Shown here: one piece after another, positions 44,932 to 55,199 of the stretch
Layout of the letters: every line of letters starts with the position of its first letter
Position numbering within the stretch: position 1 is the first letter of the stretch
Assembly: GCA_003427395.1 (NCBI GenBank)
Contig: BFEA01000006.1
Coordinates: 95,225-159,224, forward strand
Origin: Chara braunii
Lineage: Eukaryota; Plantae; Charophyceae
Reading direction: 5' to 3'
Length of the DNA: 64,000 bases
Program-made: the position numbers and the translations under genes
The notes under the pieces: generated by a model
The model's database searches: none
Seen by the model: the letters and a program-made list of their open reading frames with translations, nothing else
Told to the model about the DNA's origin: nothing

Positions 44932-45468
44932 GGACTACACGCACTACACGGAGTCAACCCCGACCATTCTCAATGCTCATACCCCTTCGCTTTAGCCATA
45001 CAAGCCCCAACCGCCGATCCAACCAACCTGAATTAAATACTCAGCACCTTTGTTAAATGACCATTCAATAAAAGTCCGGGTGAAAGCCTTAACAAACAGT
45101 AAAACCACCAGGGCTAAAACCTTTTAGGTTGAGTGTAGAGAGTGAGTTGGAATTGAGTTGGAGACCGACGAATCGGCAACCGACCTGCTATCAGTGATAA
45201 CAGAAGGTGATCCTCAGGGGATCAAGCTGAGTCTAGTCTTGATCTTGAATCAGACACCCTAAAGGACCTGTAACACAAGATAGGTCAAATGCCCAGGCTA
45301 AATCATCAGCATATGGGGGATAAACCTCCACAGCAAATTTTCACTCAAAGCTCCCTGCCAACTAAGTTCAAATCTGCCTCTAAGCTAGTGCCCAAGCAAA
45401 GGTAGACTAATGGCTGAATCTCCCCTATTCAGGGTGGATTGCCAGAATCGCCACCTCTCAAAATATAA

Positions 45469-46075
45469 TCTAACTCCTCTAATTAAGAAAATTTCGGCAA
45501 TGCTTCCCGTAGGAAAAGTGTCTTTTCATAATTTATATAAGCTCGGATATAAAAAACAGGAGTAATCTATAACTCTGGAAAGTCAAATTTTGTCTAACTC
45601 CCTGAATTAGTAGAATTTTGGGCAGCATCCCCTTTGAAATCGGGGATTACCCAGATTTATACCAAGCCAAATTTGGACTCAGCCCATGACTGACTAATTC
45701 CTTGGTTTTATAGAAATTTCGGCAGCACTCCCCTTAGAAAGTGCTCTCCCAAAATTTACATAAGGCTAAGTCTGAAACCTGAGACTAACTTTGGCTTCCC
45801 AAGGCCCAGTTTTATCTAACTCCCTGAATTAGCAAAAATTTGGGCAGCACTCCCTTTAGAAAATGAGACTTTCTAGATTTTTACTAAGTCAGATATAACG
45901 AAAAGACAGGTTGAACTTTAACAAGTCAAAATTTGTCTAACACCTTGAATCTGTAAAAATTTCGGCAGCGCTTCCCATAGAGAAAGTAGCTTAATAGCGA
46001 GTCTCATAAAATGCAATAATCAATCTAAGTAAAATAAAGTCAACTCAGAAAATGCAGGAATTGACCTAACTCCTA
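45469..46075. repeat. Degenerate 100-124 bp tandem repeat (5 units plus a partial)
   Basis: CTAACTCC..GAATTAG..AAATTTYGGCAGCRYTYCC..TAGAAA starting at ~45469, 45593, 45693, 45815 and 45936. Confidence 0.85.
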
Positions 46076-46269
46076 TTGCTCTAGCACGTAGCGAGCCTCT
46101 AAAGCAACTACCTGTCAACCTGAAACCCAGATCAAGTAGTAATCTCACTCAGCCACATACCGGCCAAACCACAAAGGTAAGTACTCTCACCAGCCCCAAG
46201 TTCTTTTAACAAACAATAGTTCATGCTTCCTCAGTAAGTTACCCCTTTATACCCAACTTACATAAGGCA

Positions 46270-47205
46270 TAAGTCGAGGCACCTGAACTTACAGAGCGCG
46301 GCCAACTTAGCCAGGCCTAAAGTCAGAATACCTAAACTTATAGAGCGTTCTGACTTGGCCAAGTATACACAAACAGCGGGTACAACCACTTCTCTCTTCC
46401 TTGGGCGCATGACTAGACCACTCTAGTCCCCCTGAACTGTTTAAATAGCCAAGTTATACATATCTCTCTGGACTTAATTCTTCAAAAGGGACATACGGTT
46501 GAGCCGCTCAACTTAGAACACTGCTCAACCTGCCCAAGTCTGCCTTTGGTTATATTTCTTAGTTATACTCTCTTCTTTGTGATAAGCTATAGCCAGGCTA
46601 CCTAAACTTATAGAGCGGCTTGACTAGCCTGTCCTTAATAGCATAGTAATACAATATAGCCAGGTTATATCCATTGGGTTCCAACATGTACAAGGCATTG
46701 GGTCAGACTACCTGAACTTATAGAGCGGTCTGATACTCTGNCAGGTTCGTTTCTCTCTGGTCNAGTTTGTGCGAGGCAGAGGGACAGGCTACCTAAACTT
46801 ATAGAGCGGTCAGTCCCCTGCCAGGATTATCCCCTCAAAACAAAACAGGAGGAGGGTCAAGCCACCTAAACTTATAGAGCGGTTCAGACCTCCTCATTTA
46901 GAAACAATGAAACAGAAGAAATCCCTTAATAAACAAGGCGACCCAGGGTACCTAAACTTATAGAGCACCCTAAGCCCCTGGAAATCGAGCACAATCAACC
47001 CACGCACGTCAGAGCAGTCAGNACACCTAAACTTATAGAGNGNCNTGACCCTCCATGCAATTCACANCACNAGGTCTCCCCAAACTTATGGGGACATCCC
47101 AGCCTCCAGAGNTTCAGGCTACCTGANCTTATAGAGCGGCNNGAGGCTCCATNCAAACCAATAAACAAAGCGCTGGGCTTCCCCAAACTTATGGGGACCT
47201 CCCAN
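46270..47205 (+). repeat. Array of 11 stem-loops with conserved apical motif ACCTRAACTTAYAGAGC and variable stems and spacers
   Basis: Cores at 46281, 46330, 46600, 46710, 46791, 46864, 46950, 47025 and 47121, plus TCCCCAAACTTATGGGGA variants at 47077 and 47180. Each core is flanked by its own inverted repeat. Confidence 0.9.
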
Positions 47206-52406: not shown

Positions 52407-52424
52407 CTCCCCCTCCTTATACTC
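52407..52424 (-). other. Internal polypurine tract (PPT2-like)
   Basis: Minus strand GAGTATAAGGAGGGGGAG followed by TG, ~170 bp downstream of the last ORF. Confidence 0.5.
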
Positions 52425-52590
52425 TGCCCTCTCGTCCGCTTGCAGTACAAGCGGGCAAGGACTCATCCTACCACCCCTAAAGTATGTACACATCTAGGGC
52501 CCCCTCAGCCAACTCAGCCTATGTACACCTCCAACCCGTTCCTTGTGTGCTAAATACTCTGGCCCTATTGGCAAATAGGCAGACCAGCCC

Positions 52591-55199
52591 CTACTCACAC
52601 AACTCCTCCTGGTTTTGTTTGTATAATTGAGCCCTACCCCCATCTGGAGCTCGTTCCACTATCCTGCCCTGCCTGTCGTAGAATTTGTCGTTGAACTCCG
52701 CAACTCGCCCCTCGGCCTTATCCTCGAGGAGCTCTGGGCAGTCCACGGCTCTATGCCCTTCCTTCTTGCACCAAAAGCAGGAGGTATCGTGCCTCCTGGC
52801 AGTCTTCTTCTTTCTCCCCTGGGAACTCGATGCTGAAGGTGTCCCCATAGTCTCGGGGGTCACCTCATGACACGAGGGCAATCCCATATGGCCCTAGGGT
52901 TCGGGCTCCATAGCCTCAGCACCCTCACCCTCTTGTACGGCTGTGCTCACTGGCCTGTAGTCTGATGTGTCCAACTCTTGGGGTCCCTCCTCATGAGGCC
53001 TCTCTGTCACAACCACACCCCCACATAATCCTGATGGCTGAGAGCCTGCCACGGCGGCCGGCTCACTCATGACCTCCTGTTGCTGCTACCGCCCTGAATC
53101 AGGTCCTCCCGAGTCCGTCCCTGTGGCCCAAGAGCCCAGCTCCGCCCTCAACTCTCCCAACCTCGGGGCGTACTCTGGAGTGTCGAGTCTCTAAGGCCCC
53201 TCCTGTGGGGAACCTATCCCCATGGCTGCCGCCAGCTCATGCAAACGTGAGCCTCTCGTCCCCGTGGACATAGTCATAAGCGACTCATGTACTCCACCCT
53301 CCTCCTCGGCCGTGTCCGAGGGCACCTCCCTTATTGGCTCGGCCTGTCGAGGGGCCTCCACCGCTGCTCCCTGACTTGGCGACGCCTGCATCCCTCGGCT
53401 CTGGCCATCGGCACCGGCTCGTCCCGCCTAGCTAGCCTCCAAGGCTGTAGAGAGTCTGTCCACCACGGCTGCCATCTCTCCAAATCTCCTCTCCCACTCG
53501 ACCTCCCGGGCCTGGCTCCTCGCCCTCTCCTCGGCAAGTTGAGTAGTCAGATGCTCCACCTCCAACCTCCTGGTCGTAAGCTCGTCGTCGAGTAGGCTAT
53601 ACCGCTGGAACGATGTAACCGCCACCTCGCGCATCCTCCTATCCCCGAGCTCGATCGCCATCCTAGTCGCAGAGAACCCCAAGTCCCCCATCTCCCTCAG
53701 CTCACCCGCCTCATCGTCCGTCTGTCCCGTCCCTTGGGCTCGATCGGTGGTGTCGGCTCTATCTCTGTCGCCTCCATCTCCGCCTGCCTAGCGTGTATTT
53801 CGTCCAAACGGACTCGCACTCTGGCGGACTTCTCTTCGCGGGTTTCTCTTTGGGCTCTTCTCACTCGCGGCCCCTGGCCTTCCGAAGTCGACGCCTCGGC
53901 CCCCAATCTATCGCTCGTACTCGGCAATGTCGACGGTAGCCTTTCCAGTACGGGCTCCTCGATAGCTGGGTGCTTGGTCGCGGGCATAACTGAAGGTAAA
54001 TCGTAAATCGCCTCCATCCTCGCTCTCTCACCCGCCCCCTGCTCCTCTATCTCTACCTCCTGCTCAGGCACCGCAGTGGTCTCTGGGGGGAACTCCGGAA
54101 TCTCCTCGCTGCCTGGCTCAGGAATCCCCTCTAGCCATGAATGTTGTGCTGGCTCCGGAACTGGGGAGCATGGAGGGGTATCGTCTCCGACCGTGATCAC
54201 CTCCCCGCCCTGAGGCCGTACCGGATCCGGCTACTTGGCTGCCATCTCAGGATCCTGCGGCCCCTCTCGGTCCTGCATGTTCGTCTCCGTCTCGGGGTCC
54301 AAAGGCTCCTCCAACAGCACATAGCGCGCTGGCTCAACTGAGCCCTCTCCCAACCGTGAGGCCTCCCATCGAGATACATCAAGGTGAGTAGCTAAGTTTC
54401 GAAATGACGTCTCTCCTGGTATGTCCAGCCCCTGCCCTTATGGCAACGGTGAAGGCGGTCTCAGCTCCTCACGCGTAATCCGCCGAAACTCAACTGCCCG
54501 GAGGCCACAAACAGGGAACGACTCCTCCTCCGATGTGGGCCTTGCGGGCTCATCCTCCCGTTGTGCTGGGGCCCTCCTCCTCTCTCTGGCCAGCCCCACC
54601 TCTCTCAGCGCTGGTTCCCTTGGCCTCTTGCTTCGCCTCCGCCTCTCGACCCTGGGCTCGGGCCTCTCACGCTCTGGCCGTCCGAACGCCCTCCTAAGCT
54701 GGGCCTGGCAGTCCTCCCAATCTCAAGCTCTTTCCCGGATCTGTCTGGCCACCGGCCTCTCTGCCCCCCTTGTCCAAATAAGTAGGGCCTGTACCCACTC
54801 CTCCTGCGCAATCCCCTGACTCAACATGTAGTGCTCATACGCGGGAATAAACTCCTCCGCGTTCCCTTCCTCTAACCGAATGGGCATGTCGTCACGTCCC
54901 CTGGGCGAAGCCCTCAGTCGCTGCATCCCGGCCTCCATATCCGGCCAAGTCAGGGCCTCCTCGCATATCTGAGCGACAGGCTCCTCAAATCGCCCTATAC
55001 CCCTCAAGTGGTGAATCCTCTCCGCCACTGACCACCCTCTCTTTGCCGCGTGATCCCGATAAACGTCCAGGAAGAGCTCTATATTATCGTCATCGAACTC
55101 AGGCGTAGGCTCCCTCCTAGGCGGCTCGTGCTGCTCGCCTCTCCCCGCTGCCCTCTGGGGCCCCTGCCGTGGCCGTGCGTCCCTCCCGCCCCTCTACAC
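52591..55199 (-). pseudogene. Second Gag-like ORF downstream of pol (two capsid-like N-terminal repeats, coiled coil, CCHC zinc knuckle)
   Basis: Read-through gives PTPEFDDDNIELFLDVYRDHAAKRGWSVAERI... and PIRLEEGNAEEFIPAYEHYM...WVQALLIW. Coiled coil at 53428-53691. C-terminal CFWCKKEGHRAVDC in 52591-52887. Several stops and frameshifts. Confidence 0.75.

What the first reader, a model, noticed from the sequence alone, without database searches (positions are those of the whole stretch)
44932..55199. Candidate new system: a Gypsy element carrying a second Gag plus a modular structured-RNA cargo
Seen: between integrase and the 3' LTR lie ~10 kb containing, in element order, a second Gag-like gene, an internal PPT, a hairpin-dense GC-rich region, two U6 snRNA-derived copies, an 11-hairpin array with a conserved loop, and a ~120-bp repeat. 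Known: Athila/Tat/Ogre elements can have extra ORFs and long repeat-bearing 3' regions, and Cassandra TRIMs carry 5S rRNA sequence. I do not know of an autonomous-type LTR family with this combination. Inference: the modules could form a protein-RNA system, e.g. the second Gag binding the hairpin array, or U6 mimics acting as decoys, stability elements or splicing modulators.
Basis: partly seen in the sequence, partly recalled or inferred. Interest (0 to 1): 0.88.

Follow-up and report, generated by a model that had tools for sequence, protein, structure and literature searches.

The report
Giant Chara retrotransposon with second Gag
The flagged 10 kb is the inherited 3' half of a ~21-kb Ty3/Gypsy retrotransposon family of the alga Chara braunii; besides gag-pol it carries a second Gag-like gene kept by selection, an array of 11 RNA hairpins with one invariant loop, and decayed U6 snRNA copies, in the same order in every copy examined.

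Summary
The element lies on the minus strand, from window 43188 to beyond 64000. It has LTRs about 93% identical, a tRNA-like PBS, and gag-PR-RT-RNH-IN. There is a ~900-aa third ORF ("Gag2") with a capsid-like fold and a CCHC knuckle. There are three sense-strand U6-derived copies, not two. There are 11 hairpins sharing the apical loop A-UAAGUU-U, and 4-5 repeats of ~120 nt. Two items fail: purine tracts are everywhere, and the "hairpin-dense GC-rich" stretch is no more structured than shuffled sequence. Eight related Chara braunii loci, with pol identity down to about 65%, were readable to different extents; each shows the modules it covers in the same order, so these are not private nested insertions. 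Gag2 shows codon-periodic substitution, which indicates purifying selection. The hairpin stems covary, and each subfamily has its own apical sequence at the same position in the element. The U6 copies sit in a ~2.9-kb cassette that cannot be aligned between copies. They are mutated, vary from 0 to 3 per element, and are most simply passive captures of co-packaged U6 RNA. A Gag2-hairpin partnership is plausible but untested. Verdict: a real, previously undescribed variant of the long-3'-region plant Gypsy elements. This particular copy is dead.

The parts
62370..64000 (-). 5' LTR; it runs off the window end, because its first ~20-30 nt lie beyond 64000
   Evidence: 93.5% identical to 43188-44443/44634-44933. 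Window 63908-64000 aligns with the LTR 5' part of other copies.
62350..62367 (-). Primer binding site TGGCGCCGTTGCCGGGGA, two bases after the LTR end ...CGACA
   Evidence: Read directly from the sequence. The match to the 3' end of plant tRNA-Asp is from memory and was not tested.
60525..61988 (-). gag (Gag1), with its own CCHC knuckle
   Evidence: PF03732 Retrotrans_gag at E 0.005, below the gathering score. Translation. 75 Chara braunii relatives, many named 'Retrotransposon gag domain-containing'.
55398..60374 (-). pol, broken into several ORFs: protease 58740-60374, RT 57586-58914, RNase H 56514-57692, integrase 55398-56510
   Evidence: Pfam PF13975, PF00078, PF17917/PF17919 and PF00665. 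The pol stop '...FVARE*' is conserved in all copies.
52594..55193 (-). Gag2 (third ORF, ~900 aa when intact): capsid-like domain 54726-55193, acidic/Pro-rich linker, coiled coil, CCHC knuckle 52732-52779. Dead in this copy.
   Evidence: Codon-periodic substitution, p 1e-8 to 1e-12. Start codon lost and followed by a stop in the window copy.
50850..52445 (-). Conserved non-coding block. It includes two ~43-nt CCCCUUC...GGAAG hairpin units at 52196-52258.
   Evidence: 75-85% identical even to subfamilies whose pol is 62-76% identical. No codon periodicity, p 0.2-0.7. The antisense ORF 50786-51334 is conserved only at nucleotide level.
47740..50560 (-). Hypervariable ~2.9-kb cassette. It cannot be aligned between copies except for the U6 islands and its edges. 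Length (2.8-3.5 kb) and GC content (0.55-0.59) are kept in the close copies.
50077..50189 (-). U6-derived copy 1 (weak)
   Evidence: RF00026, 22.5 bits, E 0.05. nhmmer E 9e-17 with a profile built from the family's U6 copies, this one included.
49833..49934 (-). U6-derived copy 2, full length; ACAGAGA changed to ACGGGAA and AGC to UGC
   Evidence: RF00026, 53.4 bits, above the gathering score of 44.
49654..49753 (-). U6-derived copy 3, full length; ACAGAGA and AGC intact, 5' stem-loop altered, ends in UUUG
   Evidence: RF00026, 51.6 bits.
47330..47736 (-). Second conserved non-coding block
   Evidence: Present at 70-76% identity in L006, L007 and L009, with no codon periodicity.
46266..47212 (-). 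Array of 11 stem-loops. Each has a variable basal stem of 6-12 bp and a conserved apex CG-C(U)CUA[UAAGUU]UAG-G-U; two short variants read CCCCA[UAAGUU]UGGGG.
45470..45992 (-). Four units of a ~120-nt repeat; each unit is partly self-complementary
   Evidence: MFE z -1.6.
43188..44960 (-). 3' LTR, with a ~115-nt deletion near its 5' end and a ~190-nt insertion at 44443-44634 relative to the 5' LTR. The weak PPT-like GAGAATGGTCGGGG lies just upstream.

Best explanation
The region is the family-typical 3' half of an old, abundant lineage of ~21-kb Ty3/Gypsy elements of Chara braunii that show no chromodomain. SHOWN: after pol stops at a conserved '...FVARE*', a separate ORF begins about 210 nt downstream. 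It encodes Gag2, which has a two-lobed capsid-like domain, a disordered linker, a coiled coil and a CCHC knuckle, and which evolved under purifying selection while the family diversified. After it come about 7.7 kb of non-coding sequence in a fixed order: conserved block, hypervariable cassette with 0-3 sense-strand U6-derived copies, conserved block, array of 8-11 hairpins, 4-5 repeats of 120 nt, then the 3' LTR. The hairpins keep position-specific stems through compensatory changes. Their apex is the slowest-evolving part within a subfamily and differs between subfamilies. INFERRED: Gag2 is translated from a subgenomic or spliced transcript, as env-like extra ORFs are. The hairpin array is a multivalent binding platform on the element's sense RNA for a sequence-specific RNA-binding protein. 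The most likely partner is element-encoded (the Gag2 knuckle or Gag1 NC), because the apex changes in concert in all units of a subfamily while the stems stay unit-specific; its role would be RNP or VLP assembly on the element's own RNA. The U6 copies were captured when reverse transcriptase switched template onto a co-packaged full-length U6 transcript. That mechanism gives sense orientation and a complete 5'-to-oligo-U copy. They are now mostly decaying passengers in a cassette that is repeatedly replaced by recombination. The confidence of 0.7 applies to the shown architecture and to reading it as selected family parts plus a passive U6 capture; the specific Gag-hairpin partnership alone I put at about 0.3.
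For: Architecture and order: blastn maps of the window element against L001-L009. Host and abundance: 100 representative clusters carry the Gag2 domain, 94 of them at E<1e-10; 19 of the 20 looked up are Chara braunii. Gene models place Gag2 after PR-RT-IN. Gag2 selection: mismatches by codon position are 28/80/31, 23/68/40 and 116/49/52, p 5e-11 to 1e-12, comparable with RT and IN. An intact 554-aa single-exon Gag2-like gene model exists in L009. Capsid fold. Hairpins: identical spacing (43, 53, 76, 86, 73, 81, 110, 270, 49 nt) in L001 (both copies), L004 and the window, and from H3 onward in L003 and L005. 79.3% of cells pair against 66.6% in shuffles (0/500). The covariation score is 0.441 against 0.216, and at most 0.196 when partners are slid. 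Among orthologous hairpins the apex varies in 10% of columns, the basal stem in 31% and the flanks in 45%, with 7 two-sided compensatory pairs. L007 and L009 carry 8-hairpin arrays at the same place with the apices UUC[UACUGU/CAUGGU]GAA and UUC[UAAGUU]GAA, also covarying: 85% against 76%, and 0.467 against 0.289, 0/500. By eye, some unit-specific stems look shared across subfamilies, for example GGGTCAGG...CCTGACTGC in L009 and window hairpin 4. U6: all copies on the element strand are in sense; they are full length by the Rfam model; 1-3 per element in the window and L001-L006. Retroviruses selectively package U6, and snRNA copies associated with LTR retroelements have been reported (PMC4378196, PMC4752605, PMC4476161 citing Giles 2004).
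Against: There is no expression, splicing or binding data. All copies examined carry stops or frameshifts somewhere, and this copy's LTRs are ~7% diverged, so the family may be extinct. The covariation tests use related sequences (orthologues and paralogues), which inflates the shuffle statistics; the slid controls and the orthologue analysis reduce this problem but do not remove it. The strand of the hairpins is only weakly indicated: 89 G-U against 52 A-C cells. An array in the 3' UTR would be present on both genomic and any subgenomic RNA, which does not suit a packaging signal that must discriminate between them. The hexaloop UAAGUU is shared by two subfamilies, so a conserved host factor is not excluded. 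Only three subfamilies support the claim that the apex changes in concert. The Foldseek E-values for Gag2 are individually weak (0.13 and above), and Pfam Retrotrans_gag does not match Gag2. The U6 islands stay recognisable where their flanks cannot be aligned, which could mean some constraint on them.
Confidence: 0.7

Rival explanations
1. The 10 kb is a mosaic of independent nested insertions and debris private to this copy: another element's gag, U6 pseudogenes, MITE-like hairpins.
For: This copy is degenerate. The 47.7-50.6 kb stretch has no alignable counterpart elsewhere.
Against: The other modules recur in the same order and with the same spacing in the related loci that cover them. No internal LTR pair or long direct repeats flank any module. 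Gag2 shows codon-level selection across copies.
Confidence: 0.03
2. The hairpin array binds a host factor rather than an element protein. One version is a constitutive-transport-element-like export signal for a very long unspliced RNA. Another is a set of pseudo-5'-splice sites (A/G-UAAGU) that recruit U1 snRNP to control splicing, polyadenylation or retention near the 3' LTR.
For: The array sits just upstream of the 3' LTR, where simple retroviruses carry CTE/RTE-type elements (from memory). The hexaloop UAAGUU is identical in two subfamilies. Hairpin 10 and some others read GUAAGU, the 5' splice-site core. A divergent relative carries a 71-nt tandem repeat with ACUUACCUG, which is identical to the 5' end of U1 and the reverse complement of the consensus 5' splice site. 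U6 also belongs to 5'-splice-site recognition.
Against: L007 has different hexaloops, UACUGU and CAUGGU, which a fixed host factor would not tolerate easily. Only 5-6 nt are exposed for pairing. The splice-site resemblance is short and could be chance. No Rfam U1 match in L009 at E up to 10.
Confidence: 0.22
3. The U6-derived copies are functional parts of the element, acting as decoys for U6 partners, as stability or packaging handles, or as internal pol III transcription units.
For: U6 islands stay detectable in a cassette where everything else has become unalignable, and they are present from the window family out to L006, whose pol is ~65-70% identical. The 5' half (positions 1-62) is the best-kept part, and L006 keeps only that. 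One window copy retains ACAGAGA and AGC.
Against: Most copies carry substitutions in the ACAGAGA box, the AGC triad or the 5' stem. Copy number varies from 1 to 3. None was detected in L007 or L009 at E<0.01. Identity between copies (~70-79%) is no higher than for the rest of the element.
Confidence: 0.1
4. The hairpins act as DNA or as a small-RNA source: cruciform or protein-binding sites in cDNA or chromatin, or precursors of siRNA/miRNA-like RNAs that regulate the element.
For: Both strands can form the hairpins. The G-U over A-C excess is only 1.7-fold.
Against: The stems, about 16 bp including the apex, are short for Dicer substrates. A double-stranded-DNA binding site would not need compensatory stem changes.
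Confidence: 0.07

Closest known systems
OTA non-chromovirus Ty3/Gypsy lineages of land plants (Athila, Tat, Ogre, Retand)
   Same: Very large elements with a long pol-to-3'-LTR region, extra ORFs and tandem repeats in that region. The PBS is not tRNA-Met (PMC6317226, PMC11963269, PMC7264820). No chromodomain was detected here.
   Different: The known extra ORFs are env-like (sense) or antisense (Transposase_28/TRP28, Athila ORF-1, PMD). Here the extra ORF is sense and Gag-like, with a capsid fold and a CCHC knuckle, and none of those Pfam families match. The pol-to-3'-LTR distance is ~10.4 kb, against 2.9-6.6 kb reported for Retand. Retand was found only in eudicots and monocots (PMC11963269). 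RT phylogeny was not done, so lineage membership is open.
Cassandra, Helenus and Ajax (TRIMp3): LTR retrotransposons carrying small-RNA-derived sequence
   Same: A cellular pol III RNA sequence is carried by an LTR retroelement family and inherited by its copies (PMC10886601).
   Different: Those are tiny non-autonomous TRIMs in which 5S- or tRNA-derived sequence lies inside the LTR and probably supplies a promoter. Here a spliceosomal snRNA (U6) lies in the internal 3' region of an element that encodes gag and pol. It occurs in 0-3 decayed copies and not in the LTR.
Retroviral packaging and reverse transcription of U6 and other snRNAs; U6-LINE chimeric pseudogenes
   Same: U6 is selectively packaged by retroviruses and is a frequent partner in RT template switching (PMC4378196, PMC4752605, PMC4476161). 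This gives a ready mechanism for a sense-oriented, full-length U6 insert.
   Different: The known products are dispersed pseudogenes or 5' U6-LINE chimeras, not an insert carried inside a replicating LTR element lineage.
Cis-acting hairpin signals of retroelements and RNA viruses (psi stem-loops, CTE/RTE, coat-protein operator hairpins)
   Same: Stem-loops whose loop sequence is fixed while the stems covary; repeated copies give avidity. This comparison is from general knowledge.
   Different: An array of 8-11 dispersed copies with one apex, placed 1.3-2.3 kb upstream of the 3' LTR, has not to my knowledge been described for a plant or algal LTR element. No binding partner is known.

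Membership tests
Ty3/Gypsy LTR retrotransposon | Two long terminal repeats in direct orientation flanking the internal region | tested here: met
   43188-44933 against 62370-63907, 92-93% identical. The 5' LTR continues to the window end.
Ty3/Gypsy LTR retrotransposon | Domain order gag-PR-RT-RNase H-IN on one strand | tested here: met
   Pfam hits in that order on the minus strand.
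Ty3/Gypsy LTR retrotransposon | PBS next to the 5' LTR, PPT next to the 3' LTR, target-site duplication | tested here: inconclusive
   A TGG-initiated 18-nt PBS is present, but its tRNA assignment is from memory. The PPT is weak (GAGAATGGTCGGGG). The TSD cannot be tested because the 5' end lies beyond the window.
OTA (Athila/Tat/Ogre/Retand) non-chromovirus clade | Placement in the RT/RH/INT phylogeny | not tested
OTA (Athila/Tat/Ogre/Retand) non-chromovirus clade | No chromodomain; long non-coding 3' region with extra ORF | tested here: met
   No chromodomain hit in the integrase C-terminal pieces. 10.4 kb lie between integrase and the 3' LTR, with a third ORF.
OTA (Athila/Tat/Ogre/Retand) non-chromovirus clade | Lineage-typical extra-ORF domains (Athila ORF-1 PF03078, Transposase_28 PF04195, PMD PF10536) | tested here: not met
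   No such Pfam hits in any sense or antisense ORF tested. These domains occur in only 16-57% of members (PMC6317226), so their absence does not exclude membership.
Retroelement Gag (CA + NC) | Two-lobed all-helical capsid domain | tested here: inconclusive
   The model has 4+4 helices at pLDDT 80. The top Foldseek hits are all Arc, dArc, Ty3, PNMA2 or HIV CA. Single-lobe TM is 0.7-0.78, but E is 0.13 or worse. The sequence profile hits dArc2 at E 0.012.
Retroelement Gag (CA + NC) | CCHC zinc knuckle C-terminal to CA | tested here: met
   CFWCKKEGHRAVDC; PF00098 at 21.2 bits against a cut-off of 20.8. It lies ~600 aa after CA, much further than in ordinary Gag.
Retroelement Gag (CA + NC) | Match to Pfam Retrotrans_gag, or homology to the element's own Gag1 | tested here: not met
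   No PF03732 hit at E up to 1. hhalign of Gag2 against Gag1 gives probability 0.4%; blastp finds nothing.
Functional U6 snRNA gene | Rfam RF00026 match above the gathering score | tested here: met
   Two of the three copies (53.4 and 51.6 bits against 44).
Functional U6 snRNA gene | Intact ACAGAGA box, AGC triad, 5' stem-loop and U-tract | tested here: not met
   Copy 2 has ACGGGAA and UGC. Copy 1 has AUAGAGG and UGC. Copy 3 keeps ACAGAGA and AGC but has an altered 5' stem. An upstream USE/TATA promoter was not examined.
TRIMp3 (Cassandra/Helenus/Ajax) | Small-RNA-derived sequence located in the LTR of a short non-autonomous element | tested here: not met
   The U6 copies are internal, 4.7-5.3 kb from the 3' LTR, in a 21-kb element with gag and pol.

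The most novel reading that the evidence does not exclude
The element encodes its own dedicated RNP system. Gag2 (capsid-like domain plus CCHC) would specifically recognise the UAAGUU-type hairpin apex, and the 8-11-copy array would be a natural high-avidity tag. Each subfamily would have co-evolved its own protein-apex pair so that it packages only its own RNA. The neighbouring hypervariable cassette would be a hot spot where co-packaged cellular RNAs (U6, rRNA pieces) are recombined into the genome, making it a cargo slot.
Probability: 0.2. Interest if true: 0.85.

Novelty: new variant of a known kind. Interest (0 to 1): 0.62.

Why it matters
Extra ORFs and long 3' regions of plant Gypsy elements are common, but their function is unknown. 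This family has a sense-strand second Gag that shows the substitution signature of selection. It also has a covarying hairpin array whose apex differs between subfamilies. Together they suggest a testable protein-RNA pair: EMSA or CLIP of Gag2 and Gag1 NC against wild-type and loop-mutant hairpins. If the pairing holds, it would be a natural multi-hairpin tag in a streptophyte alga and a case of a retroelement splitting structural roles between two Gag proteins. The inherited U6 inserts show that snRNA capture, known from LINE chimeras and retroviral particles, can become part of a propagating LTR lineage. The cassette that cannot be aligned between copies 90% identical elsewhere points to frequent recombination at one defined site.

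Tried and rejected
1. Nested-insertion explanation: rejected on the family comparison.
2. Gag2 as a duplicate of Gag1: blastp and hhalign find no relationship.
3. Antisense coding gene of the Retand/TRP28 type. An antisense ORF (50786-51334) recurs in other copies, but amino-acid identity (42-47% to L006) is what neutral nucleotide divergence predicts, there is no codon periodicity (p 0.2-0.7), and there is no Pfam match. I read it as non-coding conservation.
4. The 314-aa ORF at 49632-50573 (+), lying over the U6 copies: no Pfam hit and no homologue in the length range searched.
5. Coding potential of the 47736-47330 block: none.
6. 'Hairpin-dense' region: the MFE z-score scan is negative.
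7. tRNA genes in the window: none.
8. Other Rfam families in the 3' region at E up to 1: none.
9. U1 origin of the ACTTACCTG repeats in L009: no Rfam support.
10. Global alignment of the hypervariable blocks with free end gaps was uninformative.
11. The Chara genome paper could not be read: not held.
12. The second long repeat family in the window (10859-42645) has no Pfam domains in its ORFs, and I did not pursue it.

Method note. Gag2 pieces were searched separately.

Full report
**What the region is**

Self-comparison of the window shows two direct repeats, 43188-44933 and 62370-63907, that are 92-93% identical. Between them, on the minus strand, Pfam finds gag, aspartic protease, RT, RNase H and integrase in Ty3/Gypsy order. 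The reading frames are broken into several pieces. The LTR ends ...CGACA. Two bases later comes TGGCGCCGTTGCCGGGGA. From memory this is the complement of the 3' end of plant tRNA-Asp; I could not test that here.

Aligning the LTR-internal junctions of several copies changes the boundaries slightly. The sequence just outside the "5' LTR" (63908-64000) is LTR sequence in every other copy. This copy's 3' LTR has lost about 115 nt near its 5' end. So the 5' LTR runs off the window, no target-site duplication can be checked, and the true internal/3' LTR boundary is near 44960. The finding's interval, 44932-55199, is therefore everything between integrase and the 3' LTR.

**Host and family**

The first piece of the putative second Gag (54726-55193, minus strand) was searched exhaustively against 1.84 billion representative proteins. 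It gave 100 hits, 94 below 1e-10. Of 20 hits looked up, 19 are Chara braunii gene models. The exception is a repetitive nematode protein matched in nine short stretches. In those models the domain follows PR, RT and IN.

I fetched nine Chara loci on eight contigs. I compared each with the window element by blastn.
- L001-L004 are 80-94% identical to the window copy.
- L005 is about 75-80% identical.
- L007, L006, L008 and L009 are subfamilies with pol 62-76% identical.
- L008 is about 40% N downstream of pol, so its 3' region could not be read.

**The modules, checked one by one**

1. Gag2.
- In this copy the frame 55193->52594 has a lost start codon (AVV* where other copies read AVMQ), about six stops and one frameshift.
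- Better copies give 636 aa (L003) and a 426-aa C-terminal part (L005), roughly 900 aa in total. L009 has an intact single-exon 554-aa relative.
- pol stops at a conserved ...FVARE*. Gag2 starts about 210 nt later, after conserved stops, so it is a separate ORF.
- The C-terminal piece has a CCHC knuckle.
- A 34-sequence profile of the N-terminal domain hits the Drosophila Arc2 capsid at E 0.012.
- An AlphaFold model (pLDDT 80) has 4+4 helices. Its Foldseek hits are dominated by Arc, dArc, Ty3, PNMA2 and HIV capsids. Single lobes superpose at TM 0.7-0.78 and rmsd 1.3 A, but E-values are only 0.13 and above.
- Substitutions between copies fall strongly on one codon position in the N-terminal part (p 5e-11 and 1.5e-8), the middle (p 0.005) and the C-terminal part (p 1e-12), as they do in RT and IN. 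Gag2 was therefore a selected protein-coding gene during the family's history.
- It is not a recent copy of Gag1.

2. U6.
- Rfam finds two full-length matches above the gathering score and a third weak one, all on the element's sense strand.
- A profile built from eight U6 copies (three from the window, five from L001-L004) finds 1-3 sense copies per element in L001-L006. It finds none in L007 or L009. Three further matches on the opposite strand, one in L002 and two in L006, lie in sequence that is inverted relative to the element; in L006 this is a 98.7%-identical inverted duplicate.
- Most copies are mutated in the ACAGAGA box, the AGC triad or the 5' stem.

3. Hairpin array.
- There are eleven stem-loops at 46266-47212. 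The motif occurs 9 times against 0.04 expected by chance.
- Folding shows a variable basal stem and a conserved apex: G.U and C-G pairs, a bulged U, a 3-bp helix CUA/UAG and the hexaloop UAAGUU. The two short hairpins share A[UAAGUU]U.
- The same hairpins with the same spacing occur in L001 (both copies), L003, L004 and L005, and in part in L002.
- On 63 aligned hairpins, 79.3% of cells pair against 66.6% in shuffles (0/500). The covariation score is 0.441 against 0.216, and at most 0.196 with slid partners.
- Among orthologous hairpins the apex varies in 10% of columns, the basal stem in 31% and the flanks in 45%. There are seven two-sided compensatory changes, several with G-U intermediates.
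- G-U cells outnumber A-C cells 89 to 52, a weak vote for the sense strand.

4. The ~120-nt repeat is real: 4-5 units in every copy that covers the position. Each unit is partly self-complementary, and consensus-structure support is modest.

5. Not confirmed.
- The "internal PPT" is not a feature: there are 40 purine runs of at least 11 nt along the whole sense strand.
- The "hairpin-dense GC-rich region" is not confirmed: its z-scores are indistinguishable from those of pol.

**What the family comparison adds**

The order is Gag2, conserved block (52445-50850), variable cassette with U6, conserved block (47736-47330), hairpin array, 120-nt repeats, LTR. This order is kept in every locus that reaches far enough.

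The two conserved blocks are at least as similar between subfamilies as pol is, and partly more so. Yet they show no codon periodicity, so they are constrained non-coding sequence.

The 2.9 kb between them behaves differently. Copies that are about 90% identical on both sides cannot be aligned there at all, apart from the U6 islands and the cassette edges. Only the two tandem neighbours in L001 match each other. Gradual divergence cannot produce this pattern, so the cassette must be replaced repeatedly. I have no demonstrated mechanism; recombination between co-packaged RNAs is the obvious candidate.

The subfamilies L007 and L009 have, at the position of the array, eight hairpins each with the same design but a different apex.
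- L009: CAUUGUUUC[UAAGUU]GAAUG.
- L007: ...UUC[UACUGU]GAA... or ...UUC[CAUGGU]GAA...
- These hairpins also covary: 85% paired against 76%, and 0.467 against 0.289, 0/500.
- By eye, some basal stems appear shared between subfamilies at corresponding units. I did not test this. If it holds, the arrays are homologous, and the apex changed in all units of a lineage while the stems stayed unit-specific.

**How it most likely works**

Shown: the architecture is inherited; Gag2 was under purifying selection; the hairpins are maintained as structures with a protected apex.

Inferred:
- The array is a multivalent binding site on the sense RNA.
- The lineage-specific apex argues for a partner that co-evolves, most simply an element protein with an RNA-binding knuckle (Gag2 or Gag1 NC).
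- Gag2 needs its own mRNA or internal initiation.
- The U6 copies are best explained as capture by template switching onto co-packaged U6. Retroviruses package U6 selectively (PMC4378196, PMC4752605), and snRNA copies associated with LTR elements have been noted (PMC4476161). The sense orientation and full-length extent fit an RNA-level event.

I rate a direct function of the U6 copies as unlikely, but not excluded, because they outlast their flanks.

A host-factor reading of the array remains a serious rival. It could be an export element, or pseudo-5'-splice sites that bind U1. In its favour, the UAAGU core resembles a 5' splice site, and L009 carries a tandem repeat with ACUUACCUG.

**Comparison with what is known**

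The closest known kind is the OTA group of plant Gypsy elements, which have extra ORFs, long 3' regions and tandem repeats there (PMC6317226, PMC7264820, PMC11963269). The extra ORFs described in those papers are env-like or antisense. I found no gag-like sense ORF, no snRNA-derived insert and no hairpin array in them. Their typical Pfam domains are absent here.

Small-RNA-carrying LTR elements (Cassandra, Helenus, Ajax; PMC10886601) are tiny TRIMs that carry 5S- or tRNA-derived sequence inside the LTR, which is a different arrangement.

I therefore call this a new variant of a known kind. RT phylogeny was not done, so lineage membership is open.

**Limits**

- There are no expression or binding data.
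- All copies seen are damaged somewhere.
- Covariation statistics on related sequences are inflated.
- Only three subfamilies bear on the change of apex.
- The tRNA assignment of the PBS and the CTE analogy rest on memory.
- Gag2 pieces were searched separately and never joined across breaks.

Noticed in passing
window 10859-42645: A different ~14-kb unit is repeated about 2.2 times in tandem: 10859-22951 equals 24844-36931 at 97%, with a third partial unit up to 42645. It has LTR-like sub-repeats, and none of its ORFs has a Pfam domain. Each unit carries a 162-nt fragment of eukaryotic LSU rRNA (model positions 1184-1345) on the minus strand, at 12139-12300 and 26124-26285.
   Followed up: partly
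L009:15726-16069: A divergent relative of the element carries two LSU rRNA fragments (model positions 1219-1331 and 1456-1888), antisense to the element, in its variable cassette. The first overlaps the rRNA segment seen in the window's other repeat family. Antisense orientation does not fit simple template switching onto rRNA.
   Followed up: no
L009:16135-17442: A tandem repeat, mostly of 71 nt, with at least 13 units, most carrying (G)ACTTACCTG(T). That sequence is identical to the 5' end of U1 snRNA, and its reverse complement is the consensus 5' splice site CAGGTAAGT. No Rfam U1 match. It lies where other subfamilies have U6 copies.
   Followed up: partly
L001:1-7307, L002:4803-9582, L003:1050-9210, L005:6767-9620, L007:2287-6368: In five of the seven loci whose upstream flank was readable, the 5' LTR is directly preceded by the 3' internal region of another copy. 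The elements therefore sit in internal-LTR-internal-LTR tandem arrays that share an LTR. In L001 the two neighbours are 93-95% identical even in the hypervariable cassette, which suggests local duplication.
   Followed up: partly
window 47740-50560 and the corresponding blocks of L001-L007: This ~2.9-kb cassette cannot be aligned between copies that are 80-94% identical on both sides, although its length and GC content (0.55-0.59) are kept. No mechanism was established.
   Followed up: partly
window 44934-44960 and 63908-64000: This copy's 3' LTR has lost about 115 nt that are present in its own 5' LTR and in all other copies. As a result, LTR self-similarity understates the LTR, and the 5' LTR runs off the window.
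   Followed up: yes
window 52196-52258; L007:16743-17013: A second hairpin repeat, CCCCUC/UU ... GGAAGAGGGG, period ~46 nt, occurs downstream of Gag2: two units in the window copy and six in L007.
   Followed up: no
window 50786-51334 (+): An antisense ORF of 183 aa recurs in other copies. It shows no codon periodicity, and its amino-acid identity is no higher than neutral nucleotide divergence predicts. It probably reflects a constrained non-coding block rather than a gene.
   Followed up: yes
window hairpin apices (46266-47212) and the U6 copy at L001:23496-23598: The 5' side of the hairpin apex, CUCUAUA, is complementary to the ACAGAGA-box region of the element's U6 copies. The match is perfect (7 nt) to the UAUAGAG variant in L001 and 6 of 7 to canonical UACAGAG. 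It may be chance.
   Followed up: no
window 46741-47915: About 30 single or double N bases cluster inside the hairpin array and just upstream of it, which points to low-confidence base calls there. A 972-nt N gap lies at 9887-10858.
   Followed up: no
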